64,000 nt of DNA from positions 124,001 through 188,000 of IMG/VR virus record IMGVR_UViG_3300034117_001582. One strand, written 5' to 3'. The stretch's first letter is position 1; every line of letters starts with the position of its first letter. Below, piece by piece: positions 39,410-64,000 of this stretch. A program made the translations under genes and the position numbers. A model generated the notes under the pieces. The model made no database searches, was not told the DNA's origin, and saw only the letters and a list, made by a program, of their open reading frames with translations.

Positions 39410-39421
39410 TTTATATTAATT

Positions 39422-43169: not shown

Positions 43170-43184
43170 TAGAAATATTATAAA

Positions 43185-45364: not shown

Positions 45365-45429
45365 ATATTTATAAATATATTGTTTAATAGAAAGAATTAT
45401 CTTATCTTTACAATAGTTCTTTGATATAT

Positions 45430-45849: not shown

Positions 45850-45852
45850 TTT

Positions 45853-45880
45853 AAACCTCATCTTAGGATGGGGTTTTTTT
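45853..45880 (+). terminator. terminator after tmRNA
   Basis: AAACCTCATC-TTAG-GATGGGGTTTTTTT. Confidence 0.8.
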
Positions 45881-45931
45881 ATGCACTATAATTATATTTT
45901 AGTGTTGTGTGAATATTATATTTTAGTGCAC

Positions 45932-45965
45932 AAAAAAACCCACCAAAAGGTAGGTTTTGTTTTTT
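45932..45965 (-). terminator. terminator for minus-strand genes
   Basis: AAAAAAACCCACC-AAAA-GGTAGGTTTT. Confidence 0.65.
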
Positions 45966-46812: not shown

Positions 46813-46819
46813 GCGTTTT

Positions 46820-49928: not shown

Positions 49929-49957
49929 TATTGTTGTTTAACAATAAATACCAGTAA

Positions 49958-50884
49958 CTAAACTATTTCCAATACCTTATTATAAACGGCAAAGATTGTT
50001 GGGTGACACTCAAATGTTTCTTTTCTTTCTAAACAATTAACAAGTGAAGGTATACCTTGTATTGATTGCCATTCTCTAACTCCGTATTTAATATCTGAAG
50101 CACAATGTAAACCACAACCACCAAGAACATAATGGTATTTATAACCTTGATTATTTTTTCTATATGGTGCTCTAAATTGAGGGTGTATTGAACTTCCAAG
50201 TTGAATAATTTCTGAGTCTGTTGTTCCTGCTAAATGAAGTAATCCTGAATCCATAGTAATGAAACACATTGCACCATTAATTAACCACCATGTTTGAGAT
50301 AAGGTTGTTTGGTTCATTAAATTCAAACCAATATCAATATTAAAATTAAAAACGGGTTTATCCACATTTGAACCACCAAGTTCTGATGAATCTTTTCCAA
50401 CAGAAATAACGGCAATACCTCTTTCATTTAATAGTTTTGTTAACATTTGCCATTTTTTTGCATCCCAAGTTCTTGAATTCCAATTTTGAACAGGGTGAAT
50501 TAAAACATATTTTTCAGGTAATCCTTCAATTGATTCTACCTCATCAGGAAAATAGTCCATTGACATTTCATCTTTGGTCAACATAAAACCTAAATTAACC
50601 GCATGAAATTGTCTAATATCCATTGCATTATGTTTATAACAAACACCGTTTGGGTGATACCCAATATTAAAGGATTGAAATACTTCATAATCATTTTTAA
50701 TGTCGTCTGTAATTTCATTAAAAATATTATCTACATAAGGATTGTTTTTAAAAATTTCTGGTTGGTTTGTTGCTACTGATATTTTTTTACCGTAAGAATT
50801 ATAAAGTTTTCTTAAAGTGGGTGTTACCGCTAAGGTATCACCTAACGCTCTACATCCTAACACATCAACACAAACATCTTTCAT
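49958..50884 (-). CDS. GT9 (heptosyltransferase-like) glycosyltransferase with C-terminal Cys cluster
   Basis: LGDTL..TP, MDSGLLHLAG, CGLHC...C...FEC. Confidence 0.85.
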   Translation of the reverse strand: MKDVCVDVLGCRALGDTLAVTPTLRKLYNSYGKKISVATNQPEIFKNNPYVDNIFNEITDDIKNDYEVFQSFNIGYHPNGVCYKHNAMDIRQFHAVNLGFMLTKDEMSMDYFPDEVESIEGLPEKYVLIHPVQNWNSRTWDAKKWQMLTKLLNERGIAVISVGKDSSELGGSNVDKPVFNFNIDIGLNLMNQTTLSQTWWLINGAMCFITMDSGLLHLAGTTDSEIIQLGSSIHPQFRAPYRKNNQGYKYHYVLGGCGLHCASDIKYGVREWQSIQGIPSLVNCLERKETFECHPTIFAVYNKVLEIV

Positions 50885-50935
50885 TCTATAATAATATGAA
50901 CTTCACAAATAAACTAAATGTTTTATTTTTATGTT

Positions 50936-53900
50936 ATGGAAAAAACTAAAATAGTCCTCATAAGTTCGTATTGTGATACCGAAGAAAAAATTGACGTTCT
51001 AATAAATACCATCAAAACCATTAAGAGTTACAATTTAGATGTAATGGTAAATAGTCCTTTACCTTTACCTTCAGATGTAATAAATATGTGTGATTTTTAT
51101 GTGCAAACAAAAGAAAACCCATTACTTAATTGGCCCGAAAAATCTGTTATGTCTTGGGCAAGATACATTGGAAAGGATAGGGAAATTGTAGTTAAAAGAT
51201 CGGTAATTGATTATGGGTGGGCAGCACTTTACCAAACTAAAAAATTATCTGAATATGCGTTAACATATGACTATGACAGATATTATCATATTATATATGA
51301 TACGGAAATTGATGATACGGTGGTTTCTACTTTTTTATCGGATAAAAAATGTAACTTTTTTCCATTTCACGAACACAAAGTTAGTTTACATTTAATTGCG
51401 TTAGATAGAGAAAACCTATTGAAATTTTCAAATCTAATAACTTTTGATAGTTACCTTAAATTTAATTGTATTGTTGAGAACTGGCTTTACAACACTCTAA
51501 TTAATAGTGATATGAATTATAAAATTGAATTAGAAAAAATTGATGATTTAATATTATTCCATAAAGACGAAAATTTATTTGACTACTCCGACATTAATGG
51601 TTTAGTTTTTTTCATAGTTAAAGATGTTGTAAATAATGATGAGGTTTGTTTATATTTTTACAATAATAAAGAAAAAATAAATGTTTTAATTACCGTAGAT
51701 GGTGTCGAGTCCTCTTATGATATATCCAATAGGGATATCATTAATTTAGGGTTTAAACCATACAATATAAAAAATGTTTTAATATCTTATGATGGAATAT
51801 CATCGGATATAACAGAAAAAATAAAAAATATTATCCACAATGTTATTGAAATTATTATGAATAAATCAAAAATTAAACTATTATATCTTACACCACACCT
51901 ATCAACAGGTGGAATGCCTCAATTTGTATTAAAAAGAATTCAAGAACTCCAAAAATACAAAGACCAAATTGAAATATTTTTGGTTGAGTATTCTCAGTTT
52001 AGTAACACATACGTTGTCCAACGAGATAAAATAATTAATCTATTAGGTGAAGGTCATTTTTTTAGTTTAGGTGATACAACCGATACAAAAAGAAAATATG
52101 AGCTAATTGATATTATTAAAAACAATAATATTGATATTGTTCATTCAGAAGAAATGTTAGAAGGATTTGAAAGTTTTAATAAAATTCCACTACCATTGTT
52201 AAATCAACTTTATTCAAATGATAGGACTTGGAAAATGGTTGAGACTTGTCATAATGTTTGGTTTAACCCACAAACACATAAAAAGTTCAATCCTGAAGCG
52301 TATTGTTTTGTTACCCCTTATCATTTAAAGGAAACGTTTTTAAATGAAACACCAATTAAGTTTTTATCTCTATACCCAATTGAGAATAAGGTAACTAAAA
52401 TTTTAGAGGAGAATGAAATCTATGGTGATTTTAATCAAGTACCACTTATTGAAAAAATTAAAGTAAGAAATGAACTTGGTTTGGATATGTTTAAAACTCA
52501 CGTACTTAATGTTGGGTTATGGACAAGTGGTAAAAATCAAGGTGAAGGTGTTGAGGTTGCAAGAGAATTAATTGACTCAAACCCAGATATTGAATTCCAT
52601 TTTATTGGGAACCAAGCTCCAAACTTTGAGGACTATTGGGGTCCAATAATGAATAATTTACCATCAAACGTAAAAGTATGGGGTGAGCGTAATGACGTTG
52701 AAAAATTCATGGCGGCTTGTGATGTTTTAATGTTTAACTCAACTTGGGAATGTAATCCGTTGGTTGTTAGAGAATCAATCAACTATGGAATGAAAATACT
52801 TGCAAGAGATTTACCACAATACATGGGTATGTTTGATGGATATATAACACCAATAGAAGGTGATGTTAAAAACATATCAAAACAATTGGTTGGACTTATC
52901 AAAAATAAGGACGTTTATAAAATATTACCTGATGATACATTTGGTGAAGATTTATTAAATTTTTATAACGCAGTTACAAATATAAAAATTACCCAAAACA
53001 AACCATTAACCAAAGATTATACTTTTGTTAGACATTATGTTAATCAACCTTATTTTGAGGTACAAGGAACCACAGAAAACAAATTGAACATTAAATATTA
53101 TGATGATAACAATAATGTTAATTATCAGAACGAATTATCAATTAATAGTTGGGTTAAATTAAATAAAGAATACTTTATTAAATGGAGAACAACGGTTGAA
53201 GAAAATGGTGAAATTATTTACGATGAGACTTTAAATTTAAAAGATAAACGAGTATATATTTCTTTTGGATCAAAATCATTAGGAGATACAATGGCTTGGA
53301 TTCCTTATTGTGAGGTATTTAGAAAAAAACATGGTTGTCAACTTATAGTATCAACATTCCTTAATAGTTTGTTTAAAGACCAATATCCTGAGATTGAATT
53401 TGTTGAACCTGGTGATTTGGTAACTAATATACACGCACAATATAGATTAGGTTGGCATTATACAAGTGAAGGGGTTTACGATAATAACAAACACCCATTT
53501 GATTTTAAGAAAATGCCATTACAAAAAACGGCAACTGACATCTTAGGTTTAGATTATGAAGAAGTTAGACCACTATTAAAATTACCTAACACACCTAAAA
53601 AGAAAAAAGTTGGTATTGGGTTTCACTCAACCGCACAATCAAAATATTGGAACAACCCTGACGGATGGCAAGCAGTTGTTGACCACCTTAATACTTTAGG
53701 TTATGAATGTATGATCTACTCTAAAGAAGGTGACGGATACATGAATAACCATTACCCTAAAGGTGTAACCATTTTTAAAGGAGGTAACTTACAAGAAGTA
53801 ATTGACGACCTATCAGAATGTGAGTTCTTTATTGGTCTCGGATCAGGATTATCTTGGTTAGCTTGGGCTTGTAAATTACCTGTCGTTTTGATTTCAGGAT

Positions 53901-55411
53901 TTAGTGAAAAATGGGCGGAAACAACATTAGACACATATAGAGTTATTAATGAAAGTGTTTGTCACGGATGTTTTAACTCAGATAGATTAGATGCCGGTGA
54001 TTGGAATTGGTGTCCACTACATAAGAACACAGATCGGATGTTTGAATGTACAAAAGAAATAAGTTCCGGTATGGTTATTAAAGAAATAAATAAAATAATT
54101 AACAAAGAATCTAATAGTGATTTAGTTACTATTATATTGTCCCACGCAAACACAAAAGAAAAAAGAAAAATTTTAATAGAACATTTAAAAACAATTAATA
54201 CAAAAATACTACTATCAACAAATTACCCAATTGATGATGAAATTAAAGTTTTATGTGATTACGTCATATATGATGAGGATAACCCAATATTATTGAAGGA
54301 GGATTTTAATAAGTATAACGTGTCTTTTTATTTTTATAGTGTCAGAAAAGGGGTTGAGGTAAGGGAATCCTTTGATTATGAACACGGGTACGCTGTTTAT
54401 AAATTAATACAAAACGGATTAACTGAATCAAAAAAATTAGGATTTAAATATTCTCATATTATAAATTACGATTATTTAATAAACAAAAACACATTACAAG
54501 ATAACTATAAATTATTAGAAAATTACGATTCCGTATTTTATAGATATAAAAATAAATCATATACGCAAGACTCATACTGTACTGGATTTTTTACAGGAAA
54601 AATAGATAAGTTAATTAAACCATTTACCCACTATAACACAAAAGACGAATATTATAATTATGACGGGTATAATAAAATATTAGAAATAATAACAAAAGAT
54701 GCGGTAAAAAAACAAAACTTAAAAGTTAAAGAACTTTTTTATGAAGACTTAAAGGAAACATCAATTGTTAATAGAGTAGACGATAACCACAAAAATAACA
54801 AAGAAGTAATGGAAGAAAACGAATTCAAAAAAATAAGTGATTATTATAATTGCGATAAAACATCCACACACACATACCATAACGTCTATTCAAAAATATT
54901 TGAAGGGATAAGAGATGAGGTATTTTCGTTATTAGAAATCGGAATTCATGAGGGAGCATCTTTAAATGTTTGGAGAGACTATTTGAAGAATGCTAATATA
55001 TATGGTTTAGATATCAATAGGGAATTTTCACATGATAGGGGTCATATTTTTAAAGGAGACCAAAATAACTTATTTGATTTAGAAAAAATCACATCAGAAA
55101 TAAAAAGTTGTAAAGTCATAATTGATGATGCTTCCCATAATCCACAACATCAAATTAAAACCTTTAATTATCTTTTTGAGAATTTATTAGAAGATGGTGG
55201 GTACTATATTATTGAAGACGTTGAAACGTCGTATTGGGATCCATTATCTGAATTATATGGGTATGAAATTGGTTATTTAAATGTTGTTGATTATTTTAGT
55301 AAATTAACACATAATGTTAATTACAAATACAATGGATTTAATAATACTTTAAAAATTGAAAGCATTTTATTTACATCAAATTGTATTGTGATAAAAAAAT
55401 TAATGAAATAA
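50936..55411 (+). CDS. multidomain glycosyltransferase: GT-A-like, GT4, TibC/Aah-type O-heptosyltransferase, GT-A-like, methyltransferase
   Basis: PHLSTGGMPQ / ECNPLVVRES (GT4); SLGDTMAW.PY, GLGSGLSWLAWA, ISGFS, YRVIN..CHGC..C..FEC (TibC); LLEIGI, IIDDASH, GGYYIIEDV (MTase). Confidence 0.85.
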   Translation: MEKTKIVLISSYCDTEEKIDVLINTIKTIKSYNLDVMVNSPLPLPSDVINMCDFYVQTKENPLLNWPEKSVMSWARYIGKDREIVVKRSVIDYGWAALYQTKKLSEYALTYDYDRYYHIIYDTEIDDTVVSTFLSDKKCNFFPFHEHKVSLHLIALDRENLLKFSNLITFDSYLKFNCIVENWLYNTLINSDMNYKIELEKIDDLILFHKDENLFDYSDINGLVFFIVKDVVNNDEVCLYFYNNKEKINVLITVDGVESSYDISNRDIINLGFKPYNIKNVLISYDGISSDITEKIKNIIHNVIEIIMNKSKIKLLYLTPHLSTGGMPQFVLKRIQELQKYKDQIEIFLVEYSQFSNTYVVQRDKIINLLGEGHFFSLGDTTDTKRKYELIDIIKNNNIDIVHSEEMLEGFESFNKIPLPLLNQLYSNDRTWKMVETCHNVWFNPQTHKKFNPEAYCFVTPYHLKETFLNETPIKFLSLYPIENKVTKILEENEIYGDFNQVPLIEKIKVRNELGLDMFKTHVLNVGLWTSGKNQGEGVEVARELIDSNPDIEFHFIGNQAPNFEDYWGPIMNNLPSNVKVWGERNDVEKFMAACDVLMFNSTWECNPLVVRESINYGMKILARDLPQYMGMFDGYITPIEGDVKNISKQLVGLIKNKDVYKILPDDTFGEDLLNFYNAVTNIKITQNKPLTKDYTFVRHYVNQPYFEVQGTTENKLNIKYYDDNNNVNYQNELSINSWVKLNKEYFIKWRTTVEENGEIIYDETLNLKDKRVYISFGSKSLGDTMAWIPYCEVFRKKHGCQLIVSTFLNSLFKDQYPEIEFVEPGDLVTNIHAQYRLGWHYTSEGVYDNNKHPFDFKKMPLQKTATDILGLDYEEVRPLLKLPNTPKKKKVGIGFHSTAQSKYWNNPDGWQAVVDHLNTLGYECMIYSKEGDGYMNNHYPKGVTIFKGGNLQEVIDDLSECEFFIGLGSGLSWLAWACKLPVVLISGFSEKWAETTLDTYRVINESVCHGCFNSDRLDAGDWNWCPLHKNTDRMFECTKEISSGMVIKEINKIINKESNSDLVTIILSHANTKEKRKILIEHLKTINTKILLSTNYPIDDEIKVLCDYVIYDEDNPILLKEDFNKYNVSFYFYSVRKGVEVRESFDYEHGYAVYKLIQNGLTESKKLGFKYSHIINYDYLINKNTLQDNYKLLENYDSVFYRYKNKSYTQDSYCTGFFTGKIDKLIKPFTHYNTKDEYYNYDGYNKILEIITKDAVKKQNLKVKELFYEDLKETSIVNRVDDNHKNNKEVMEENEFKKISDYYNCDKTSTHTYHNVYSKIFEGIRDEVFSLLEIGIHEGASLNVWRDYLKNANIYGLDINREFSHDRGHIFKGDQNNLFDLEKITSEIKSCKVIIDDASHNPQHQIKTFNYLFENLLEDGGYYIIEDVETSYWDPLSELYGYEIGYLNVVDYFSKLTHNVNYKYNGFNNTLKIESILFTSNCIVIKKLMK

Positions 55412-55502
55412 TAGATGGTGTTGATATTAAGTGGGATATATGGAATGACCATTTTATTGAATACTATAGTGAAGTGATTGTTTATATGGATAACAGATAA
55501 AT

Positions 55503-56018
55503 TTATCCATTAGCGGCCTTTATCCACTCACAAGTTAAAAAATCGGAAGTACTAACAACAGAACCTGCCACAATTAAATATTGATTAACCGTCCAATTTA
55601 TTGATAAAGTAGAAAATCCTGTTGTATAGTTAGCAACACCAATATCATCTCTCGCACCAATAGTTGAATTAATCGCTATTGTTGCATTTCCTGTTCCTGC
55701 GGCAACATTTATTGCCAATCTTCTATATAACTGAGCCGCTCTTGTGGCAGTAGCAACTGATGTATTTGTGGCAACTAAAGTCGCACCAACAAGTGTTGCG
55801 GATGTGTTAACATAAAAATAAAAACTAAATGCGTTGTTAGCCGCACTTTTTGTAACGCAAGTTTCTATTGTAACAATATCATCAGCAACAAATGTGTTCG
55901 CCGGTATTAAAATAGAATGAATTAAAGTTATAGATGTGGAGTTTACACTTCCTGTTTGTGTGGTAGATGTAACTACCGCGTATTTTTTTCCCACATTAAA
56001 TCCGTCTATTTTAGCCAT
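55503..56018 (-). CDS. fibre-associated beta protein, paralog 3
   Basis: MAKIDGFN, IPANTF, INWTV..Y.I.AG. Confidence 0.65.
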   Translation of the reverse strand: MAKIDGFNVGKKYAVVTSTTQTGSVNSTSITLIHSILIPANTFVADDIVTIETCVTKSAANNAFSFYFYVNTSATLVGATLVATNTSVATATRAAQLYRRLAINVAAGTGNATIAINSTIGARDDIGVANYTTGFSTLSINWTVNQYLIVAGSVVSTSDFLTCEWIKAANG

Positions 56019-56529
56019 TTGTAATTCTTATCCATTGACAGTTTATGTTATCGGCTGCGTTGTCAACATCACCCGCCAATATAATATAACTATCTACAGT
56101 CCAATTTATTGCTAAAGAACTTGGGATTGTGGTTAAAGCAGCATTATATATATAATCTTGATTAACATCTACAGTATTCAACAATACATTAGTCCCATTT
56201 CCTGACCCATCTGACACCATAATACTAAGCCTTCTTACAAAAAGTATTGCAGTTATGGTTGCAGTAACTCCTATGTTTTCGGCAATTTGAACCGGAGTTG
56301 TTAAATCGTCAGTATTGTTCCAATATAATCTTACATTTGAAACCGCATTAGTTCCTGTTTTTTTTACAAAAGATTCAAGTTTAACGACATCAAAAGTTTT
56401 AAATGTATTTGCTGGAACAAAAATAGAACCTAACTTAACTTCCGTTAACGAGGATGTAGTTGATTGAGGTGTTGTCAAACTTATTGTCTGAAACGGACTA
56501 TACATGTTGAACCCATTAATTTTTGCCAT
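56011..56529 (-). CDS. fibre-associated beta protein, paralog 2
   Basis: MAKINGFN, VPANTF, YWN.TDDLTTP, INWTVDSYIILAG. Confidence 0.65.
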   Translation of the reverse strand: MAKINGFNMYSPFQTISLTTPQSTTSSLTEVKLGSIFVPANTFKTFDVVKLESFVKKTGTNAVSNVRLYWNNTDDLTTPVQIAENIGVTATITAILFVRRLSIMVSDGSGNGTNVLLNTVDVNQDYIYNAALTTIPSSLAINWTVDSYIILAGDVDNAADNINCQWIRITNG

Positions 56530-56792
56530 TACAAGTCGTATACATAATTTATAAAGTCTTGAGAAACCAAAAATGAAATATTGTCAATAGTTACATCTCT
56601 AACTTTGAAAAAAATAATGTTTCCGTCAAGTTCAATTGAAACGTCTTCATCATTATTTGTAAAATATCCTTTTTGACCATTTTCATCTTCAATTAAAAAT
56701 GTTAAAGTTCTTGGGATATCTAAAAAAGAAGACCCCTCTTCTGAATCAATTTTTTTAACCAACGTGTTTCTTTTTTTTTCTAACTGTATCAT
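56529..56792 (-). CDS. hypothetical protein, possibly fibre chaperone
   Basis: 87 aa between paralogs. Confidence 0.55.
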   Translation of the reverse strand: MIQLEKKRNTLVKKIDSEEGSSFLDIPRTLTFLIEDENGQKGYFTNNDEDVSIELDGNIIFFKVRDVTIDNISFLVSQDFINYVYDL

Positions 56793-56796
56793 ATCT

Positions 56797-57303
56797 TTAA
56801 TTACTTACTTTTAAAAATTCTGTTCTAACACCTGTCCCTGTTCCACAAAATCCGGCCAATATAATGTATGAATCCACTGTCCAATTTAGTGCGACGGTAG
56901 ATAAAGCAAAACTTGCAGCCGTAAAATCAGAATCATGCGCGGTTCCTGTTCCATAAATTTTAGAACCATTTCCTGTCCCATTTGCAACAATTACTGACAA
57001 CCTTCTATTTTGACCATAAAATATACTTGTGTTCAAAAGACTTCTTACGGTTAATTGTATTGGTGTTGTTAAATCGTCAGTTTCATTCCAATATAAAGTT
57101 GTTGAATAATTTCCTGACGTTAAACCTGTTAATTTGGTTTGCCATTCTATATGTAAAATATCACCAGCAGCAAAAGTATTTGCAGGAACATAAACAGATG
57201 TAATTTTAGTTGTTGACGCCGCATTAACATAATTACTTGGTGTGCCATTAGTTGAAACAACTTGTTTATTATTATAAAAATCAAATCCGTTAAATTTACT
57301 CAT
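56797..57303 (-). CDS. fibre-associated beta protein, paralog 1
   Basis: MSKFNGFD, VPANTF, YWNETDDLTTP, LNWTVDSYIILAG. Confidence 0.65.
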   Translation of the reverse strand: MSKFNGFDFYNNKQVVSTNGTPSNYVNAASTTKITSVYVPANTFAAGDILHIEWQTKLTGLTSGNYSTTLYWNETDDLTTPIQLTVRSLLNTSIFYGQNRRLSVIVANGTGNGSKIYGTGTAHDSDFTAASFALSTVALNWTVDSYIILAGFCGTGTGVRTEFLKVSN

Positions 57304-57307
57304 ATAA

Positions 57308-60300
57308 TTAAATTTCTACCCAACTATTATCAGGATTAAAATAAATTGTTTCATTAGTCCCATCCAAACTATAACCAATTATTCTTATTATATCACCACT
57401 TCCTGAAGGTGCCGTTGTTGTTATACCTCCTGCGGTTGTTGAAACATATAAAATATCACCTGTGGTTGTTGTGAATCCTGAATTTCTAATATATCCGTTT
57501 ATTAACATACCACTCGTCGTTCCCGTACCTAACGCAAATGCTAACATTCCTGTGGAGCCTGATGCAAAATCCGCATCTGCCGCAACCCAAGCCCCTGAAC
57601 TATTATAGTAATATAGATTACCCGCAGTTAATGACCCCGTACCAAAAGTCACAATATCACCATAACCTGAAACTGAAGATGTTAATCCTGTTACGGGGTT
57701 ATGTATGAATTGGTAATCACCTCTAACATCTATTTTTCTTGATGGAGATGCGGTACCAATACCAACATTTGTTCCATCATCAAAAATAGTACTTGTGCTT
57801 GATAATGTTGATGTTGTTTGCCATTTAACGGCATAATTGGCTGTTCCTGATCCTACAAAAGAAGTTCCAGAAGTACCGTTAGTTCCGCTTGTACCATTTG
57901 TACCGTTGGTTCCTGATGTTCCATTCGTACCATTTGTACCTGACGTGCCATTTGTTCCTGAAGTTCCATTGGTTCCCGATGTTCCGTTTAATCCATTGTA
58001 AACCCACGATATTGTATAGGTCTGAGCCGAAAAAGAACCATTTCCAACAACATTGGTTAAATCAAATTGGTATACAGATCCCGAAACTGAAATACCGTTT
58101 ACAGCCCAAATACCAATAATATTATTACTACCAACTTTAGTCACTTGTAAATAAACAGTATTTCCTGATGATTGTATTGAATCAATTGCCGAAAACCAAG
58201 CCGAGTAATTAACACTGTTAATGTCGGTGGTATTAATGTAAATAATGGTTGTTGCTGATATTGTTGCGGAATCACTATTAAACTTTGTTTCGATAGGGCC
58301 ACCACCTAGTTTCCAGAAATCCCATCTACCTGAGTTTGACCCGTCATTACCATAAATCCCACTAGTTCCGTTAGTTCCATTCGTACCACTTGTTCCTCTT
58401 GTGCCTGAAGTGCCGTTGGTCCCTGAAGACCCATTAGTTCCTGATGTACCATTAGTTCCTGAAGTACCATTAGTTCCTGATGTACCATTAGTTCCTGAAG
58501 TACCATTAGTACCATTTAGTCCATTAAAGACCCACGAAACAGTATACGTAGCCTGATCGGTTAAAGCCCCTGAACCAGTGACAAAACTAAGCCCTATATC
58601 CCAATATGTGGTATTATCCGTCATACCTGTTATATCATAGATTCCAATTACACTATTATTACCTAATTCTGTTATTTGTAGATAACCTTTATTACCCGCC
58701 GATTTTAAAACGGCACAGGCATCAAACCAATCGTAATAATCTATTGTATTAATATCTACAACATTAATAGAAATATATGAAATTGTTGATATTATTTGTG
58801 TGTCAGGAACAAAGTATGTCGAAACAGGACTTCCAGGTACAGTTCCTTCATTATACCATCTTCCACTATTTGAACCATCATTACCCACTTTTCCAGTATT
58901 TCCATTATTTCCTGAAGTTCCATCAGTTCCTGAAGTTCCATCAGTTCCTGAAGTTCCTGCCTGTGCCATTAATGCCCAATTACCACTAAATGGAGGAGTT
59001 GGTATCCCCGTATTACCATTTATTAATGAAATATAAGAACTACCGGCAAATTGAACGACATCATTTATATTGTAAGTGGACATTAAGTTCCATGAACCTT
59101 GCCAATTAAATGAAATGCCACTAGTTCCGTTAGTACCTGATGTTCCGTTAGTACCTGATGTTCCATTTGTTCCATTAGTACCGTTAGTTCCTGAAGTACC
59201 ATTAGTCCCCGAAGTTCCATTTGTACCATTAGTACCATTAGTACCTGAGGTTCCATTTGTACCATTAGTACCTGAAGTTCCATTCGTTCCGCTTGTACCA
59301 TTAGTTCCATTCGTTCCGCTTGTACCATTAGTTCCATTCGTTCCAGATGTTCCTGAAGTTCCATTTGTCCCACTTGATCCATTAGTTCCATTCGTACCTG
59401 AAGTTCCATTTGTACCCGAAGTTCCATTTGTACCATTTGTTCCCGAAGTCCCGTTTGTTCCTGATGTTCCGTTTGTACCATTCGTTCCTGAAGTACCTGA
59501 TGTTCCATTGGTCCCTGAAGTTCCGTTTGTACCAGAAGTCCCATTTGTACCGTTCATTCCTGAAGTCCCATTAGTACCATTGGTTCCTGAAGTACCATTT
59601 GTTCCGCTAGTGCCATTTGTCCCTGAGGTACCATTCGTTCCACTAGTTCCGTTTGTCCCGTTCGTTCCACTTGTTCCGTTAGTTCCAGATGTCCCATTTG
59701 TTCCGTTAGTTCCACTAGTGCCGTTGGTACCATTTGTACCATTAGTTCCTGAAGTCCCATTAGTACCGCTAGTTCCATTTGTACCATTTGTTCCTGATGT
59801 TCCATTTGTGCCGTTAGTTCCGCTCGTACCATTTGTCCCACTTGTACCGTTGGTACCATTCGTTCCTGAAGTTCCATTTGTTCCGCTAGTCCCGTTTGTT
59901 CCCGATGTTCCATTTGTACCGTTAGTTCCTGAAGTACCATTTGTTCCGCTCGTACCATTAGTCCCTGAAGTACCGTTGGTTCCATTTGTGCCGTTTGTCC
60001 CTGAAGTCCCGTTAGTACCGTTCGTTCCCGAAGTTCCATTTGTTCCATTAGTTCCTGATGTGCCGTTTGTTCCTGAAGTTCCATTAGTCCCTGATGTTCC
60101 ATTAGTACCGTTAGTTCCGTTAGTACCAGATGTTCCATTCGTTCCTGAGGTTCCATTTGTTCCATTAGTACCATTCGTTCCTGAAGTTCCATTAGTACCA
60201 TTCGTACCGCTAGTGCCATTTGTGCCGCTAGTTCCATTAGTCCCCGACGTACCATTTGTTCCATTGGTACCTGATGTTCCATTGGTACCGCTAGTTCCAT

Positions 60301-63300
60301 TCGTGCCGTTTGTTCCCGACGTTCCATTAGTACCGTTCGTCCCTGAAGTTCCGTTTGTACCATTCGTTCCTGAAGTTCCGTTGGTACCTGAAGTTCCATT
60401 CGTACCGTTGGTACCACTTGAACCATTTGTTCCCGAAGTTCCATTAGTCCCGTTAGTCCCATTAGTACCTGAAGTTCCGTTTGTACCTGAAGTTCCGTTT
60501 GTACCATTAGTACCCGATGTTCCATTTGTTCCTGAAGTTCCATTTGTACCTGAAGTCCCGTTAGTACCTGAGGTTCCATTGGTGCCTGATGTTCCGTTAG
60601 TACCTGAAGTCCCATTTGTTCCATTTGTACCTGAGGTGCCGTTTGTTCCTGAAGTCCCGTTTGTTCCGTTAGTTCCACTTGTACCATTCGTACCTGAAGT
60701 CCCATTAGTTCCTGAAGTTCCGTTTGTACCATTAGTACCTGATGTACCATTAGTTCCTGAAGTTCCGTTTGTACCACTAGTACCTGATGTACCATTAGTT
60801 CCAGATGTTCCGTTCGTACCATTTGTACCTGATGTTCCGTTAGTACCTGACGTACCATTAGTACCTGAAGTTCCGTTTGTACCTGATGTACCATCAGTCC
60901 CATCAACACCAGAAAGTCCACTAGATCCATTCGTACCATTCGTTCCAGATGTGCCATTTGTACCCGAAGTTCCATTTGTACCATTTGTTCCCGAAGTCCC
61001 GTTTGTTCCTGAAGTTCCGTTGGTACCATTAGTCCCGTTTGTTCCCGATGTACCATTTGTGCCGCTAGTACCGTTTGTTCCATTTGTGCCGCTAGTACCA
61101 TTCGTACCGTTGGTTCCATTTGTCCCTGATGTACCATTTGCTCCACTTGTACCATTTGTACCTGAAGTTCCATTTGTTCCATTTGTGCCTGACGTTCCGT
61201 TTGTACCGTTTGTCCCCGAAGTTCCATTTGCTCCGCTAGTTCCATTAGTCCCGTTGGTACCACTTGAACCATTTGTACCTGAAGTTCCATTTGTTCCGTT
61301 AGTCCCTGATGTGCCATTTGTTCCCGAAGTTCCATTAGTACCGTTGGTTCCATTCGTCCCATTTGTTCCTGATGTTCCATTTGTTCCGTTTGTACCTGAA
61401 GTACCATTTGTACCTGAAGTTCCATTTGTACCTGAAGTTCCGGCAGATGTTAATAAATTTGTACCGACACCCGCAGCACATGCGGTTATGTCAAGAAACG
61501 CACCTCTTGCAGTACCACCTTGTTCAAAAAACCTAATTCTATCTTGCCATATGTCAAAAGTGACCCCTGTACCTGAAATGGTAGTGTTAGTTACAGGTTT
61601 GTTTAATAGGATTTCCCCACCTTCATCACCAGCCTGATACAATACACTTAATTTTGTACCATCAAATGTTAAAAGAGATTCGGCAACTATTCCTCCTGAT
61701 CCGTTTGACGTTAAAACTTGATTATCTGAACCTGGTACTGCAGGTGATGATCCACTTGTTCCGTTTGTTCCGCTCGTACCATTAGTGCCTGAAGTTCCAT
61801 TTGTTCCGTTTGTACCTGAAGTTCCATTAGTTCCTGACGATCCATTTGTACCATTTGTTCCTGAAGTTCCGTTGGTCCCGCTCGTACCATTTGTACCATT
61901 TGTACCTGAAGTTCCATTAGTTCCGTTAGTTCCGCTAGTACCATTAGTACCGCTAGTACCATTCGTACCTGATGTTCCGTTTGTCCCATTTGTTCCCGAA
62001 GTTCCATTTGTACCTGAAGTCCCGTTCGTACCATTTGTTCCTGATGTTCCATTAGTCCCTGATGTTCCGTTTGTTCCATTAGTCCCTGAAGTTCCATTCG
62101 TTCCATTAGTTCCGCTAGTCCCATTTGTACCTGAAGTCCCGTTGGTTCCATTAGTACCATTCGTCCCTGAAGTGCCATTTGTGCCGCTAGATCCATTAGT
62201 CCCAGAAGTTCCGCTAGTACCGTTAGTGCCTGAAGTACCATCTGTACCTGATGTTCCCGCAATAAATGGTGATAATGAAGTGGTTACCTGAGCAATTGTT
62301 GCATCTTCAAAATAACAAGTCATTGTTTTTGCACCTAATGAGGTTGCATAGAACTTAACGACTATTCTATCACTAATATTTACCGTTGTTGCGGGTACAG
62401 GTACAGAAAATAAATAAAGCTCCACAAGCGTACCGTCGCTAATGGGGTGGGGTGCCGCACTATTTGATCCAATTAAAGTTTCAGTACCACCTGTTGTTCT
62501 AATATATATATCAGCATATAATTTTGGAGTACCACCATTGGAGCTCATACTAACGTAATTCTCAAAGTTCCAGTTTCCTGCGGGTATTGTGGTTATTCCT
62601 GGATCACCAATAATTGTTGAAAATGAACCTATTAGTTGTGTTCCAGCACCTGTTGCCGTTAATGTTGTTCCGGCACCTATCACTATGTTTCTATCCATTA
62701 CATAGTAAGTTGGAATTGTAGATGCGGATGAAGGGTTAAAATAATAAACTAAACCTGTTGAAAATCCATTCACCCCTGAAGTTCCATTAGTACCGCTGGT
62801 TCCGTTCGTTCCATTTGTACCTGATGTTCCATTGGTCCCTGATGTTCCATTCGTCCCGTTTGTTCCCGATGTACCATTCGTTCCGTTAGTACCTGAGGTT
62901 CCATTCGTTCCGCTAGTTCCATTTGTTCCTGAAGTCCCATTTGTACCATTTGTTCCGTTTGTTCCACTAGTCCCATCTGTTCCGTTAGTCCCCGATGTTC
63001 CGTTGGTTCCATTAGTCCCGCTAGTACCATTGGTACCTGATGTTCCTGAAGTTCCATTTGTACCTGACGTTCCATTTGCACCATTTGTTCCCGAAGTCCC
63101 ATTTGTACCATTAGTCCCATTTGTACCATTAGTTCCTGATGTTCCATTAGTCCCCGATGTGCCATTTGTTCCATTAGTTCCTGATGTACCATTAGTACCG
63201 TTAGTTCCTGAAGTCCCGTTAGTTCCTGAAGTCCCGTTTGTGCCATTTGTTCCTGACGTTCCGTTAGTTCCACTTGTACCATTGGTACCTGATGTTCCGT

Positions 63301-64000
63301 TAGTTCCATTAGTACCATTAGTACCATTAGTTCCTGAAGTACCATTTGTACCTGATGTACCATTCGTACCATTTGTTCCACTAGTACCATTTGTTCCCGA
63401 AGTTCCATTAGTTCCATTCGTACCTGAAGTACCTGATGTTCCATTGGTCCCTGAAGTTCCGTTTGTACCAGAAGTCCCTGAAGTACCATTTGTACCGTTA
63501 GTTCCACTTGTACCATTTGTTCCGTTAGTGCCCGATGTTCCATTAGTACCTGAAGTACCGTTTGTTCCGTTAGTTCCTGAGGTACCATTCGTTCCCGAAG
63601 TTCCATTTGTACCATTGGTTCCGCTAGTTCCGTTTGTTCCATTAGTACCTGAAGTTCCATTAGTTCCTGACGTACCATTTGTACCGTTTGTTCCCGAAGT
63701 ACCGTTTGTTCCCGAAGTACCATTTGTTCCTGATGTTCCATTAACCCCCGATATGCCACTTGTACCATTTGTTCCTGATGTTCCATTTGTACCATTTGTT
63801 CCGCTAGTACCATTCGTACCTGAAGTTCCGTTCGTTCCATTTGTACCTGAAGTGCCGTTTGTTCCATTAGTTCCTGATGTCCCATTTGTACCATTCGTTC
63901 CATTTGCTCCGCTAGTACCATTTGTACCCGAAGTTCCATCAGTACCATTAGTTCCGTTAGCACCTGAAGTACCATTTGTTCCGCTAGTACCATCCGTTCC
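57308..64000 (-). CDS. giant collagen-like (Gly-Thr-Asn/Gly-Thr-Ser) fibre protein, 5'-truncated (>2200 aa)
   Basis: the frame of the 1821-aa ORF stays open upstream of the GTG at 62773 (...GTSGVNGF) with GTN/GTS repeats to the window edge; interspersed globular domains; NVGIGT.SP fibre motif. Confidence 0.85.
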   Translation of the reverse strand, partial: GTDGTSGTNGTSGANGTNGTDGTSGTNGTSGANGTNGTNGTSGTNGTNGTSGTNGTNGTSGTNGTSGTNGTNGTSGTNGTSGISGVNGTSGTNGTSGTNGTSGTNGTNGTSGTNGTSGTNGTNGTSGTNGTNGTSGTNGTSGTNGTNGTSGTNGTSGTNGTNGTSGTNGTNGTSGTSGTNGTSGTNGTSGTSGTNGTNGTSGTNGTSGTNGTNGTSGTNGTSGTNGTNGTNGTNGTSGTNGTSGTNGTSGTNGTNGTSGTNGTSGTNGTNGTSGTNGTNGTSGTNGTSGTNGTNGTNGTNGTSGTNGANGTSGTNGTSGTSGTNGTSGTNGTNGTSGTNGTDGTSGTNGTNGTNGTSGTNGTSGTNGTSGTNGTNGTSGTNGTNGTSGTNGTSGTNGTNGTSGTNGTSGVNGFSTGLVYYFNPSSASTIPTYYVMDRNIVIGAGTTLTATGAGTQLIGSFSTIIGDPGITTIPAGNWNFENYVSMSSNGGTPKLYADIYIRTTGGTETLIGSNSAAPHPISDGTLVELYLFSVPVPATTVNISDRIVVKFYATSLGAKTMTCYFEDATIAQVTTSLSPFIAGTSGTDGTSGTNGTSGTSGTNGSSGTNGTSGTNGTNGTNGTSGTNGTSGTNGTNGTSGTNGTNGTSGTNGTSGTNGTNGTSGTNGTSGTNGTNGTSGTNGTSGTNGTSGTNGTNGTSGTNGTNGTSGTNGTSGTNGTNGSSGTNGTSGTNGTNGTSGTNGTSGTNGTSGSSPAVPGSDNQVLTSNGSGGIVAESLLTFDGTKLSVLYQAGDEGGEILLNKPVTNTTISGTGVTFDIWQDRIRFFEQGGTARGAFLDITACAAGVGTNLLTSAGTSGTNGTSGTNGTSGTNGTNGTSGTNGTNGTNGTNGTSGTNGTSGTNGTNGTSGTNGSSGTNGTNGTSGANGTSGTNGTNGTSGTNGTNGTSGTNGTSGANGTSGTNGTNGTNGTSGTNGTNGTSGTNGTSGTNGTNGTNGTSGTNGTSGTNGTNGTSGTNGTSGTNGTNGSSGLSGVDGTDGTSGTNGTSGTNGTSGTNGTSGTNGTNGTSGTNGTSGTSGTNGTSGTNGTSGTNGTNGTSGTNGTSGTNGTSGTNGTNGTSGTNGTSGTNGTNGTSGTNGTSGTNGTSGTNGTSGTNGTSGTNGTSGTNGTNGTSGTNGTSGTNGTNGTNGTSGTNGSSGTNGTNGTSGTNGTSGTNGTNGTSGTNGTNGTSGTNGTNGTSGTNGTSGTNGTNGTSGTNGTSGTNGTSGTNGTNGTSGTNGTNGTNGTSGTNGTSGTNGTNGTNGTSGTNGTSGTNGTSGTNGTNGTSGTNGTNGTSGTNGTNGTNGTSGTNGTSGTNGTSGTNGTNGTSGTNGTSGTNGTSGTNGTNGTSGTNGTSGTNGTNGTSGTNGTNGTSGTNGTSGTNGTNGTNGTSGTNGTNGTSGTNGTSGTNGTNGTSGTNGTSGTNGTSGTNGTSGTNGTNGTSGMNGTNGTSGTNGTSGTNGTSGTSGTNGTNGTSGTNGTSGTNGTNGTSGTNGTSGTNGTNGSSGTNGTSGTSGTNGTNGTSGTNGTNGTSGTNGTSGTNGTNGTSGTNGTNGTNGTSGTNGTSGTNGTNGTNGTSGTNGTSGTNGTSGISFNWQGSWNLMSTYNINDVVQFAGSSYISLINGNTGIPTPPFSGNWALMAQAGTSGTDGTSGTDGTSGNNGNTGKVGNDGSNSGRWYNEGTVPGSPVSTYFVPDTQIISTISYISINVVDINTIDYYDWFDACAVLKSAGNKGYLQITELGNNSVIGIYDITGMTDNTTYWDIGLSFVTGSGALTDQATYTVSWVFNGLNGTNGTSGTNGTSGTNGTSGTNGTSGTNGSSGTNGTSGTRGTSGTNGTNGTSGIYGNDGSNSGRWDFWKLGGGPIETKFNSDSATISATTIIYINTTDINSVNYSAWFSAIDSIQSSGNTVYLQVTKVGSNNIIGIWAVNGISVSGSVYQFDLTNVVGNGSFSAQTYTISWVYNGLNGTSGTNGTSGTNGTSGTNGTNGTSGTNGTNGTSGTNGTSGTSFVGSGTANYAVKWQTTSTLSSTSTIFDDGTNVGIGTASPSRKIDVRGDYQFIHNPVTGLTSSVSGYGDIVTFGTGSLTAGNLYYYNSSGAWVAADADFASGSTGMLAFALGTGTTSGMLINGYIRNSGFTTTTGDILYVSTTAGGITTTAPSGSGDIIRIIGYSLDGTNETIYFNPDNSWVEI
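59120..61440 (-). repeat. main block of 9-bp degenerate GTN/GTS repeats (others at ~57870-57990, 58360-58520, 61755-62258, 62775-64000)
   Basis: period-9 pattern of GTWCC-containing units with synonymous variation. Confidence 0.95.

What the first reader, a model, noticed from the sequence alone, without database searches (positions are those of the whole stretch)
49958..64000. Candidate phage protein-glycosylation system: TibC/Aah-type iron-finger transferases beside a sequon-saturated Gly-Thr-Asn/Ser fibre
Seen: a 1.5-kaa enzyme contains a full TibC/Aah-like domain (LGD..AW.PY, GLSWLAWA, four-Cys CHGC..C..C finger) plus GT4, two GT-A-like and a methyltransferase domain. It is divergent from a GT9 enzyme that has its own Cys cluster. 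Both lie next to a >2200-aa fibre built of hundreds of GTN/GTS triplets, where nearly every non-Gly residue is a Thr, Ser or Asn acceptor and N-G-T is a canonical N-x-T sequon. Known: TibC/Aah O-heptosylate Ser in repetitive autotransporter passengers, and Thr glycosylation decorates or stabilises Gly-X-Y collagens such as Bacillus BclA. Inference: the phage builds a densely glycosylated fibre with its own enzymes, for stabilisation, glycan shielding or host-surface mimicry.
Basis: partly seen in the sequence, partly recalled or inferred. Interest (0 to 1): 0.9.

Follow-up and report, generated by a model that had tools for sequence, protein, structure and literature searches.

The report
Phage glycosyltransferases beside giant Ser/Thr-rich fibre
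A large freshwater phage encodes a 2,919-residue, proline-free Gly-Thr-Asn/Ser tail-fibre protein next to a five-domain sugar-adding enzyme whose core closely matches the E. coli enzyme that sugar-coats adhesins; the pairing recurs in many phages, which suggests (unproven) that they coat their own fibres with sugars.

Summary
The window comes from a 292-kb phage contig. On the minus strand (57308-64000, running 2,067 nt past the window end) lies one ORF of 2,919 aa with about 700 Gly-X-Y triplets, about 90% of them GTN or GTS, and no proline in the triplets. Beside it lie a 308-aa GT9 enzyme with an invariant four-Cys cluster and a 1,497-aa enzyme. That enzyme reads GT-A-like, GT4, TibC-like, GT-A-like, then a TylF/MycE-like methyltransferase.

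The TibC-like domain matches solved TibC at E=1.4e-70 and passes NCBI's Aah/TibC model (291 bits, cutoff 200). It keeps the catalytic Asp, Thr/Lys/Trp donor contacts and all four iron-finger Cys. The adenine-contacting Arg is aliphatic or Thr in all 50 phage homologues, so the donor sugar is open.

A GT4 plus TibC-like pair sits within 10 kb of Ser/Thr-rich Gly-X-Y fibres in 26 of 28 assessable lineages, including cultured Microcystis phage Mel-JY01. Related fibres without such repeats lack the pair (7 versus 18, none discordant), but only 2-3 contrasts are phylogenetically independent.

Asn at Y varies from 0 to 64%, so an N-x-T sequon is not the conserved feature. O-glycosylation of the fibre is the best-supported reading. 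No chemistry supports it yet.

The parts
57308..64000 (-). C-terminal 2,230 aa of a 2,919-aa fibre protein. The start lies 2,067 nt beyond the window end. Six G-X-Y runs are interrupted by globular inserts (fibre aa counted from the window end: 415-581, 753-853, 1631-1681, 1712-1826, 1890-2002). A 183-aa C-terminal domain ends the protein (57311-57859).
   Evidence: Translation and triplet census. N-terminus recovered from the source contig. The C-terminal domain is 56.5% identical to the end of the annotated tail fiber protein of Flavobacterium phage immuto. That domain family has 379 hits in IMG/VR.
50918..55411 (+). 1,497-aa five-domain enzyme: GT-A-like, GT4, TibC-like, GT-A-like, sugar O-methyltransferase-like.
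50918..51847 (+). Domain N1 (aa 1-310). A distant paralogue of domain D and presumed GT-A-like. It is a variable add-on, present in only some relatives.
   Evidence: tblastn cross-hit between D and N1; alignment A2; distribution across loci
51848..53077 (+). GT4 (GT-B) domain. The Pfam hit covers aa 516-663. This domain always accompanies the TibC-like domain, either fused or as the gene directly upstream.
   Evidence: Weak NCBIfam hits to the IagA/BgsA and SdgA families, far below their cutoffs.
53081..54100 (+). TibC/Aah-type (BAHT) O-heptosyltransferase-like domain, aa 722-1061. Asp790 aligns with TibC D110, Thr905 with T226, Lys909 with K230 and Trp980 with W305. Cys1015, 1018, 1032 and 1044 align with the iron finger. 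Val961 replaces R286 and Gly975 replaces P300.
   Evidence: residue roles from PMC4358343
54101..54817 (+). Domain D (aa 1062-1300), GT-A fold by structure prediction.
54818..55408 (+). TylF/MycE/CmcI-like methyltransferase domain, a family known for sugar O-methylation of macrolides.
   Evidence: PDB 3ssm E=7e-13 and 8ia9 E=1.5e-8; Pfam Methyltransf_24 below its cutoff
49958..50884 (-). 308-aa GT9 enzyme, divergent from the big enzyme. It begins at the catalytic domain, with no N-terminal barrel. The G-D motif and a C-terminal four-Cys cluster are invariant.
   Evidence: present in most related loci
55503..57303 (-). Three paralogous 168-172-aa all-beta proteins plus an 87-aa ORF, directly downstream of the fibre gene on the same strand.
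   Evidence: Translations. Conserved as a set in a subset of relatives. Predicted jelly-roll fold with only weak matches to TNF-like lectins and a cyanophage short-tail-fibre carbohydrate-binding domain.
49083..49928 (-). 281-aa protein with a C-terminal PA14/GLEYA carbohydrate-binding-type domain, next to the GT9 gene.
   Evidence: Pfam GLEYA E=1.2e-17 and PA14 E=3e-12; present in many related loci

Best explanation
This is a phage-encoded protein-glycosylation module aimed at the phage's own giant tail-fibre protein.

Proposed mechanism, step by step:
1. The 2,919-aa fibre is made in the host cytoplasm. It carries about 700 proline-free, charge-free Gly-Thr-Asn/Ser triplets between small globular domains.
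2. The TibC/Aah-type GT-B domain transfers a sugar from a nucleotide sugar onto Ser/Thr hydroxyls of the repeats. It probably acts before or during trimerisation and probably as an oligomer, because the iron finger is intact and the thumb-tip positions are invariant in the phage family, though with Tyr-Met where TibC has Phe-Val. TibC works the same way on adhesin repeats in the cytoplasm.
3. The obligatorily paired GT4 domain adds to or extends that first sugar.
4. The optional GT-A-like domains, the separate GT9 enzyme and the TylF-like methyltransferase add to, branch or methylate the glycan.

The product would be a densely O-glycosylated fibre. If the repeats form a collagen triple helix, they alone would span about 0.6 micrometres.

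What is shown: the domain identities, the conservation of catalytic residues and the recurrent gene linkage.
What is inferred: that the fibre is the acceptor, that the linkage is O-linked, the identity of the sugar, and the benefit (helix stabilisation, protease or adsorption shielding, or receptor interaction).
For: (a) Enzyme identity. E=1.4e-70 to solved TibC over 340 aa. It scores above the curated cutoff of NCBI's Aah/TibC model. D110, T226, K230, W305 and all four iron-finger Cys are invariant in 50 distinct phage homologues.

(b) Linkage across relatives. Of 36 lineages (clusters at 90% identity) of TibC-like loci, 26 have Ser/Thr-rich G-X-Y genes within 10 kb, usually 0.4-8 kb away. 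Two lineages with full flanks have none. Eight are truncated and cannot be judged.

(c) Reverse test on the fibre's C-terminal-domain family. Of 25 assessable lineages, 7 have Ser/Thr-rich repeats plus the TibC-like gene and 18 have neither. None is discordant. One contrast is nested: L114 has both features inside a well-supported clade whose other members, including Flavobacterium phage immuto, have neither.

(d) The link holds outside this clade. It is seen in cultured Microcystis phage Mel-JY01. It is seen in a 216-kb contig where a standalone TibC-like gene sits beside four GTS-repeat genes. It is seen in MAG contigs of 45-49% GC.

(e) What is conserved in the fibres is hydroxyl side chains, which suits an O-glycosyltransferase. 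X is Ser/Thr in at least 63% of triplets in 29 of 31 fibres (0.31-1.00 overall). Y is mostly Ser, Asn or Asp. Pro is close to 0.

(f) The accessory domains fit glycan building. They have a GT-A fold or resemble sugar O-methyltransferases. FkbM or Methyltransf_24 methyltransferase domains also accompany the TibC-like region in other homologues.

(g) The window also carries a large sugar-nucleotide and glycosyltransferase cluster at 2.7-19.4 kb, including GDP-mannose 4,6-dehydratase and a GT10 fucosyltransferase.
Against: - No chemical evidence exists that any of these fibres is glycosylated.
- Known BAHT substrates are beta-helical autotransporter passengers with a strand-loop-strand acceptor motif, not G-X-Y repeats. 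No autotransporter is present here.
- The adenine-contacting Arg, whose Ala mutant abolished or largely diminished TibC activity (PMC4358343), is replaced by an aliphatic residue or Thr in every phage homologue.
- No ADP-heptose pathway gene was found in the window. The one small nucleotidyltransferase is closer to glycerol-3-phosphate cytidylyltransferases (E=1e-15) than to RfaE-like proteins (E=5e-6).
- Two lineages and a 630-kb contig have the enzyme without a nearby fibre.
- The co-occurrence statistics rest on only 2-3 phylogenetically independent contrasts. The Fisher p of 2e-6 is therefore inflated.
- Neighbourhood could partly reflect a shared late or structural gene module.
Confidence: 0.55

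Rival explanations
1. The enzymes build or alter a non-protein glycan, such as host lipopolysaccharide, capsule or a free polysaccharide, or they modify a host surface protein. They sit next to the fibre gene only because both belong to the same late-gene block.
For: GT9 enzymes are classically LPS-core heptosyltransferases. The 308-aa GT9 scores as well against LPS heptosyltransferase models as against the Aah/TibC model. The window holds a polysaccharide-type gene cluster at 2.7-19.4 kb. Some TibC-like loci have no fibre within 10 kb.
Against: The TibC-like domain passes a model built for protein O-heptosyltransferases, while LPS heptosyltransferase I scores only 23 bits against a cutoff of 185. 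Presence of the enzyme tracks the Ser/Thr-repeat state of the fibre, not merely the presence of a fibre of that family. No membrane-anchoring or lipid-carrier enzymes were seen next to it.
Confidence: 0.15
2. The enzymes glycosylate another virion protein instead of, or besides, the repeats. Candidates are the three small jelly-roll paralogues downstream of the fibre, the PA14 protein, or capsid or tail proteins as in mycobacteriophages.
For: The small paralogues carry several N-x-T/S and Ser/Thr-rich stretches and lie between the fibre and enzyme genes. Phage-encoded glycosyltransferases do decorate capsid and tail-tube C-termini in mycobacteriophages (Freeman et al. 2023, PMC10527164, cited).
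Against: The small paralogues occur in only a subset of TibC-bearing loci. The Ser/Thr-rich G-X-Y genes occur in nearly all of them.
Confidence: 0.15
3. The repeats are N-glycosylated at Asn in N-G-T sequons.
For: There are 289 N-x-S/T motifs in the window part of the fibre.
Against: Asn at Y falls to 0.00-0.06 in many enzyme-linked fibres, including Mel-JY01, L057, L170 and L177. None of the ORFs scanned with Pfam resembles an HMW1C-type or PglB-type N-glycosyltransferase; about a dozen head-module ORFs were not scanned with Pfam. BAHT enzymes make O-linkages (PMC4358343).
Confidence: 0.05
4. The repeat region is not a collagen triple helix. It could be a beta-solenoid or a polyglycine-II/polyproline-II bundle, or stay disordered and mucin-like. 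The TibC-like enzyme would then see something closer to its classical beta-helical substrate.
For: The triplets contain no Pro and almost no charged residues. Thr sits at X rather than Y, unlike described bacterial collagens, where Pro is the commonest residue at X and Thr at Y (PMC8968730). Three GTNGTS hexads equal 18 residues, a typical solenoid turn (my inference).
Against: Strict Gly every third residue runs unbroken for up to 259 triplets, which is the collagen signature. Collagen-like segments are common in phage fibres (PMC3368898).
Confidence: 0.2

Closest known systems
BAHT family: TibC-TibA and Aah-AIDA-I of E. coli (bacterial autotransporter heptosyltransferases; PMC4358343)
   Same: The TibC-like domain aligns to TibC residues 40-387 at E=1.4e-70. 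It keeps the catalytic Asp, the beta-phosphate Thr and Lys, the sugar-contacting Trp and all four Fe-binding Cys. The thumb-tip positions are invariant within the phage family. Both are cytoplasmic enzymes encoded beside a long, highly repetitive, Ser/Thr-rich surface protein that they would modify many times.
   Different: The partner is a G-X-Y fibre of a virus, not a beta-helical autotransporter. The Arg that reads adenine is replaced by an aliphatic residue or Thr, and the stereoselectivity position is Gly. The domain is always paired with a GT4 domain and is often fused to GT-A-like and methyltransferase domains, which implies a multi-sugar, methylated glycan rather than single heptoses.
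Mycobacteriophage virion glycosylation (Freeman et al. 2023, PMC10527164; known to me, and cited in PMC12619734)
   Same: Phage-encoded glycosyltransferases next to structural genes decorate the phage's own virion proteins with O-linked glycans.
   Different: There the acceptors are short C-terminal extensions of capsid and tail-tube subunits, and the enzymes are not BAHT-type. Here the presumed acceptor is a fibre with about 700 triplets.
BclA and related collagen-like glycoproteins of Bacillus and Clostridioides spores (PMC8968730)
   Same: Prokaryotic G-X-Y proteins rich in Thr form surface filaments. The review describes BclA as glycosylated and says the sugars are believed to aid hydration and stability. 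The layout is also N-terminal anchor, collagen-like region, C-terminal globular domain.
   Different: BclA repeats are described, from my own knowledge, as mainly GPT (Pro at X, Thr at Y) and far shorter. The enzymes involved there are not TibC-like. The host structure is a spore, not a virion.
Collagen-like tail-fibre proteins of prophages and phages (e.g. E. coli O157:H7 prophage proteins, PMC3368898)
   Same: G-X-Y segments are embedded in phage fibre proteins and flanked by trimerising globular domains.
   Different: From my own knowledge those segments are short, commonly tens of triplets. I know of no dedicated glycosyltransferase partner described for them.
Giant-virus autonomous glycosylation (Mimivirus collagen and its glycosylating enzyme; chlorovirus capsid glycans; PMC4691112, PMC9614988)
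   Same: Viruses carry their own sugar-nucleotide pathways and glycosyltransferases, including GDP-mannose 4,6-dehydratase as seen here at 14405-15382, to glycosylate virion surface structures.
   Different: Those are eukaryotic viruses. Mimivirus collagen is modified on hydroxylysine, and no BAHT-type enzyme is involved.

Membership tests
BAHT (TibC/Aah O-heptosyltransferases) | Sequence membership: scores above the curated cutoff of the Aah/TibC equivalog model, and is homologous to solved TibC | tested here: met
   TIGR04414 291.2 bits against a cutoff of 200. PDB 4rap E=1.4e-70 over query aa 722-1061 and TibC aa 40-387.
BAHT (TibC/Aah O-heptosyltransferases) | Catalytic base Asp-110, and Thr-226, Lys-230 and Trp-305 contacting the donor | tested here: met
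   Asp790, Thr905, Lys909 and Trp980 are invariant in 50 distinct phage homologues. Residue roles come from PMC4358343.
BAHT (TibC/Aah O-heptosyltransferases) | Arg-286 hydrogen-bonding adenine N1, the basis of ADP-sugar specificity | tested here: not met
   Val961 in the window. Val, Leu, Ile or Thr in all 50 phage homologues and in the environmental homologues that retain the Cys finger.
BAHT (TibC/Aah O-heptosyltransferases) | Four-Cys 1Fe-0S iron finger (Cys-339, 342, 358, 370) | tested here: met
   Cys1015, 1018, 1032 and 1044 align and are invariant. Metal binding itself is not testable here.
BAHT (TibC/Aah O-heptosyltransferases) | N-terminal flattened beta-barrel (TibC residues 1-97) | tested here: inconclusive
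   The alignment covers TibC from residue 40 on. Pfam TibC_1st was not reported for the window enzyme. It was seen weakly (E=5e-4, below cutoff) in the Mel-JY01 homologue.
BAHT (TibC/Aah O-heptosyltransferases) | [quoted passage not shown] | not testable with these tools
   The thumb-tip positions are Tyr-Met where TibC has Phe-Val, and are invariant in the phage family. The oligomeric state of a 1,497-aa fusion protein is unknown.
BAHT (TibC/Aah O-heptosyltransferases) | Cognate substrate is an adjacent autotransporter adhesin with strand-loop-strand acceptor sites | tested here: not met
   No autotransporter in the locus. The recurrent neighbour is a Ser/Thr-rich G-X-Y fibre.
BAHT (TibC/Aah O-heptosyltransferases) | Transfers heptose from ADP-heptose to Ser | not testable with these tools
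   This needs biochemistry. No heptose-pathway gene was found in the window.
Prokaryotic/phage collagen-like proteins | Long uninterrupted (Gly-X-Y)n flanked by non-collagenous domains | tested here: met
   Six runs in the window part, the longest 259 triplets. There are 701 triplets in the full protein, with globular inserts and N- and C-terminal domains.
Prokaryotic/phage collagen-like proteins | Stabilising composition: Pro at X, Thr at Y, and/or many charged residues | tested here: not met
   X is 94% Thr. Y is 57% Asn and 41% Ser/Thr. No triplet contains Pro, and charged residues are rare. Typical composition is taken from PMC8968730.
Prokaryotic/phage collagen-like proteins | Formation of a triple helix | not testable with these tools
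This needs circular dichroism or EM.
Phage tail fibre | Homology of a terminal domain to a known tail-fibre protein, and location in a structural module | tested here: inconclusive
   The C-terminal 117 aa are 56.5% identical to the end of the annotated tail fiber protein of Flavobacterium phage immuto. That annotation is itself untested. A weak profile hit to a 'neck fiber' (8keg, E=0.001) was also found. The N-terminus has no match.

The most novel reading that the evidence does not exclude
A widespread group of large aquatic phages makes 'glyco-collagen' fibres. These would be proline-free, charge-free Gly-Thr/Ser-Ser/Asn chains that can fold into, or be kept as, stable sub-micrometre filaments only because a BAHT-derived enzyme plus a GT4 partner coats nearly every triplet with methylated oligosaccharide. 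That would be a new solution to collagen stability. It would also be a new, non-autotransporter substrate class for the TibC family, possibly with a non-ADP donor.
Probability: 0.25. Interest if true: 0.85.

Novelty: new variant of a known kind. Interest (0 to 1): 0.66.

Why it matters
TibC/Aah-type enzymes are known only as modifiers of enterobacterial autotransporter adhesins. Phage virion glycosylation has, to my knowledge, been demonstrated mainly in mycobacteriophages.

If the inference holds, three things follow.
- The BAHT family has a second, much larger natural substrate class. There are 319 hits in IMG/VR alone and 4,453 protein clusters of stand-alone size.
- Virion glycosylation would be common among large freshwater phages.
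- A collagen-type repeat without proline or charge would depend on sugars.

The last point bears on the long-standing question of how prokaryotic and viral collagens are stabilised. It would also offer a self-contained enzyme-plus-substrate pair for making densely glycosylated fibrous proteins.

The idea is directly testable, because a cultured relative exists (Microcystis phage Mel-JY01). In its GenBank record the collagen-like gene is not annotated on the correct strand.

Tried and rejected
- Nucleotide search of the locus and of the head region against 50,697 phage records found no match.
- PHROGs on the fibre N-terminus, inserts and C-terminus, the small paralogues and the PA14 protein gave nothing useful.
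- Pfam and NCBIfam on domains N1 and D gave nothing. A PDB profile search for D gave nothing. The fold was obtained only through structure prediction.
- The fibre N-terminus had no PDB or phage-record match.
- The promoter and terminator scan of 49.8-57.5 kb gave counts equal to shuffled expectation and was uninformative.
- No tRNA gene is present in the window.
- Heptose supply. The 146-aa nucleotidyltransferase at 15387-15824 scores equally on the RfaE-domain-II and TagD models, both far below cutoff. Against PDB it is closer to glycerol-3-phosphate and ethanolamine-phosphate cytidylyltransferases. It is therefore not counted as evidence for ADP-heptose synthesis. The Mel-JY01 neighbourhood also shows no heptose genes.
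- Rejected: the 407-aa and 853-aa ORFs inside the repeat (62770-63993 minus strand; 59076-61637 plus strand). They are stop-free alternative frames of the repeat.
- Rejected: assembly artefact.
- Rejected: N-glycosylation at N-G-T as the conserved logic.
- Rejected: the Fisher test as a probability. The tree gives only 2-3 independent contrasts.
- The genome-contig scan returned only 11 loci because the derived peptide patterns were narrow. It says little about true bacterial BAHTs.
- I did not fetch enterobacterial BAHT sequences as yardsticks. The printed PDB alignment was enough.

Full report
**What the window is.**
The 64-kb window has about 30% G+C. It encodes a T4-type major head protein (27025-28830, minus strand), a portal (33331-35139) and a large terminase (35183-36958). 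It is therefore a tailed phage. Megablast found no match for two stretches of it (27000-47000 and 49000-57400) in 50,697 deposited phage genomes. A protein-pattern scan of IMG/VR found the source, contig IMGVR_UViG_3300034117_001582 of 291,867 bp, with the window at about 124,001-188,000. The head protein is about 40% identical to those of Microcystis phage Mel-JY01 and Flavobacterium phage immuto.

**The fibre.**
- On the minus strand, the frame from 64000 to the stop at 57308 is open throughout.
- That stretch holds 500 Gly-X-Y triplets in six runs, including 271 GTN and 190 GTS. It also holds 289 N-x-S/T motifs.
- I fetched the adjoining contig DNA through a unique 40-mer. The start codon lies 2,067 nt past the window (MANKKISQLP...). 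The protein is 2,919 aa with 701 triplets.
- Synonymous codons are scrambled. At DNA level 98.9% of 55-mers are unique and no 101-mer recurs. The repeat is maintained at protein level and is not an assembly artefact.
- Other ORFs listed inside the repeat are stop-free alternative frames.
- Between the runs lie globular inserts of 51-167 aa. The last 183 aa form a domain with 379 relatives in IMG/VR.
- The only cultured-phage homologue of that domain is the C-terminal end of the annotated tail fiber protein of Flavobacterium phage immuto, at 56.5% identity.
- A profile search touches a 'neck fiber' structure only weakly (8keg, E=0.001).
- The composition is unusual. X is 94% Thr, Y is Asn or Ser, and no triplet contains Pro. 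Described bacterial collagens favour Pro at X and Thr at Y (PMC8968730).
- At the canonical rise of about 0.286 nm per residue (textbook value), about 2,100 repeat residues would span about 0.6 micrometres as a triple helix. That fold is not tested here.

**The enzymes.**
The 1,497-aa protein (50918-55411, plus strand) has five parts.

| Part | Residues | Identity | Evidence |
|---|---|---|---|
| N1 | 1-310 | Distant paralogue of D, presumed GT-A-like | |
| GT4 | Pfam hit 516-663 | GT-B glycosyltransferase | |
| TibC-like | 722-1061 | BAHT-type O-heptosyltransferase-like | |
| D | 1062-1300 | GT-A fold by prediction | |
| Methyltransferase | 1305-1453 | MycE (E=7e-13), TylF, CmcI relatives | |

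Details on these parts:
- The TibC-like region aligns to solved TibC (4rap) at E=1.4e-70. It scores 291 bits on NCBI's Aah/TibC model, whose cutoff is 200.
- Sequence searches say nothing about N1 or D. An AlphaFold model of D (pLDDT 80, pTM 0.81) retrieves 166 Foldseek hits at E<=1e-3; all 50 listed are GT-A-type nucleotide-sugar transferases or related nucleotidyltransferases.
- The MycE and TylF relatives are sugar O-methyltransferases (my knowledge of those enzymes).
- The divergent 308-aa gene (49958-50884, minus strand) is a GT9 enzyme (E=2e-15). It starts at the catalytic domain. In 24 homologues it has an invariant G-D motif and an invariant C-terminal four-Cys cluster.

**Residue-level test against TibC.**
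The eLife structure paper (PMC4358343) assigns these roles:
- Asp-110 is the catalytic base.
- Thr-226 and Lys-230 contact the beta-phosphate.
- Trp-305 contacts heptose O4.
- Arg-286 contacts adenine N1 and explains ADP specificity.
- Pro-300 determines stereoselectivity.
- Cys-339, 342, 358 and 370 form the iron finger needed for dodecamer assembly and activity.

In the window enzyme the matching residues are Asp790, Thr905, Lys909, Trp980, Val961, Gly975 and Cys1015, 1018, 1032 and 1044. Across 50 distinct phage homologues the Asp, Thr, Lys, Trp and all four Cys are invariant. The Arg position is always Val, Leu, Ile or Thr. The Pro position is Gly, Ser or Ala. The environmental homologues that keep the Cys finger also have an aliphatic residue at the Arg position. 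Catalysis is probably intact, but the nucleotide (and hence the sugar) cannot be assumed to be ADP-heptose.

No heptose-pathway gene was found in the window. The small nucleotidyltransferase at 15387-15824 resembles glycerol-3-phosphate cytidylyltransferases more than RfaE-like proteins.

**Is the enzyme linked to the fibre?**
The TibC-like domain has 319 hits in IMG/VR, and I examined the best 80 loci with 10-kb flanks.
- The conserved core is GT4 followed by TibC-like. The GT9 gene and a PA14-domain gene are common neighbours. N1, D and the methyltransferase are variable add-ons.
- After clustering at 90% identity there are 36 lineages. Of these, 26 have Ser/Thr-rich G-X-Y genes within 10 kb, 2 with full flanks have none, and 8 are too truncated to judge.
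- In the reverse direction I collected 80 loci through the fibre's C-terminal domain. Of 25 assessable lineages, 7 have Ser/Thr-rich repeats and all 7 have the TibC-like gene. The other 18 have no such repeats, or only short GAT/GPQ-type ones, and none has the gene.
- The nominal Fisher p is 2e-6, but the sequences are related. On a tree of the domain, the repeat state changes 3 times and the enzyme state 4 times. That gives only 2-3 independent contrasts. All are concordant, but they are too few for a sign test.
- Independent support comes from cultured Microcystis phage Mel-JY01. Its 1,226-aa protein, annotated 'methyltransferase FkbM', reads GT4, then a D-like domain, then TibC-like at 50% identity. 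It lies 2.6 kb from an unannotated plus-strand GSS/GTS/GTR collagen-like ORF.
- A 216-kb contig has a GT4-methyltransferase gene and a standalone TibC-like gene abutting four GTS-repeat genes.
- MAG contigs of 45-49% G+C show the same adjacency.
- A 630-kb contig has the GT4 and TibC-like pair but no repeat gene within 10 kb.

**Which residue is the likely acceptor?**
Over 31 enzyme-linked fibres, Ser/Thr is the dominant residue at X in most (0.88 or more in 19 of them; range 0.31-1.00). Asn at Y ranges from 0.00 to 0.64. Pro is about zero except in two outliers. None of the ORFs scanned with Pfam resembles an N-glycosyltransferase. The conserved feature is therefore a hydroxyl side chain, which fits an O-glycosyltransferase.

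**Best explanation.**
A phage-encoded O-glycosylation module acts on the phage's own fibre. The TibC-like domain places the first sugar on Ser/Thr of the repeats in the cytoplasm. The obligate GT4 partner adds or extends. The accessory GT-A-like domains, the GT9 enzyme and the methyltransferase elaborate the glycan. Domain identities, residue conservation and linkage are shown. The acceptor, the sugar and the benefit are inferred. I put this at about 0.55.

**Rivals.**
- A non-protein acceptor, with linkage that is only modular (0.15).
- Another virion protein as the acceptor (0.15).
- N-glycosylation (0.05).
- On a separate axis, the repeats may not form a collagen helix at all (0.2).

**Comparison with the known.**
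The system works like TibC-TibA and Aah-AIDA-I: a cytoplasmic BAHT encoded beside a hyper-repetitive Ser/Thr-rich surface protein. It fails two family criteria, the autotransporter substrate and the adenine-reading Arg. It also adds a constant GT4 partner. It resembles mycobacteriophage virion glycosylation (PMC10527164) in logic but not in enzymes or acceptor. It resembles Bacillus BclA in being a Thr-rich collagen-like protein of a kind reported to be glycosylated (PMC8968730).

Full-text searches found no paper connecting heptosyltransferases, collagen-like repeats and phages, and none on Mel-JY01. Automated pipelines do already label such proteins 'autotransporter strand-loop-strand O-heptosyltransferase'. 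I therefore rate this a new variant of a known kind. It has good comparative support, no chemistry yet, and a cultured phage available for a direct test.

Noticed in passing
window 2693-19370 (+ strand): A large glycan-building gene cluster. It holds a GT1-like gene (2693-3934), GT2-type genes (5270-6730, 8073-8792, 9616-10362, 18564-19370) and methyltransferases (7504-8073; FkbM type at 12874-13536). It also holds a GT10 fucosyltransferase (11632-12483), GDP-mannose 4,6-dehydratase (14405-15382, E=4e-111) and a small cytidylyltransferase-like protein (15387-15824). It could supply and extend the fibre glycan.
   Followed up: partly
window 13544-14155 (+): A 204-aa DegT/DnrJ-type aminotransferase match that covers only profile positions 165-237 of 360. 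It looks like a fragment or a split gene.
   Followed up: no
L081 (GenBank PP395634.1, Microcystis phage Mel-JY01) 41-2176 (+ strand) versus the annotated CDS 739-2298 (- strand): The deposited annotation calls a Pro/Val/Glu-rich ORF on the opposite strand of what is clearly a GSS/GTS/GTR collagen-like gene. That gene appears to run off the start of the linear record. The neighbouring 1,226-aa 'methyltransferase FkbM' is really GT4, then a GT-A-like domain, then TibC-like.
   Followed up: partly
window 55503-57303 (-): Three paralogous 168-172-aa proteins (31-36% identical to one another) plus an 87-aa ORF lie between the fibre and the enzyme. They are predicted to be all-beta jelly rolls (pLDDT 80). 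Fold matches are only weak (E about 2e-3), to TNF-like lectins and a cyanophage short-tail-fibre carbohydrate-binding domain. They could be fibre-tip or glycan-binding accessories.
   Followed up: partly
window 49083-49928 (-): A protein with a PA14/GLEYA carbohydrate-binding-type domain sits next to the GT9 gene. It recurs in many related loci at 47-91% identity.
   Followed up: no
window 41090-44219 (+): A 681-aa AAA+ ATP-dependent protease homologue (phrog_4871, E=3.5e-223) is followed by a 344-aa peptidase. This is an unusual pair to find beside the head module.
   Followed up: no
window 27025-28830 (-): The major head protein is 602 aa. The best matched stretch to the T4-type head family covers only aa 335-579, and tblastn to relatives comes in two pieces covering about 60%. 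This suggests a large extra N-terminal or inserted region.
   Followed up: no
L083 6282-6330, upstream of the fibre start codon: No Shine-Dalgarno-like purine run precedes the fibre ATG. The leader is A/T-rich (aaaaaacccattta). Together with the fibre tip's similarity to a Flavobacterium phage fibre, this hints at a Bacteroidota-type host. The evidence is weak.
   Followed up: no
L060-L062 and L070-L074 (IMG/VR), L176 (630-kb contig): These are lineages in which the GT4 and TibC-like pair has no Ser/Thr-rich G-X-Y gene within 10 kb. Either the fibre gene lies elsewhere on these large contigs, or the enzyme has another acceptor there.
   Followed up: partly
window 58001-64000: G+C rises to 41-45% against about 30% elsewhere. 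The Gly (GGN) and Thr (ACN) codons of the repeat explain this, so it is not evidence of foreign origin.
   Followed up: yes
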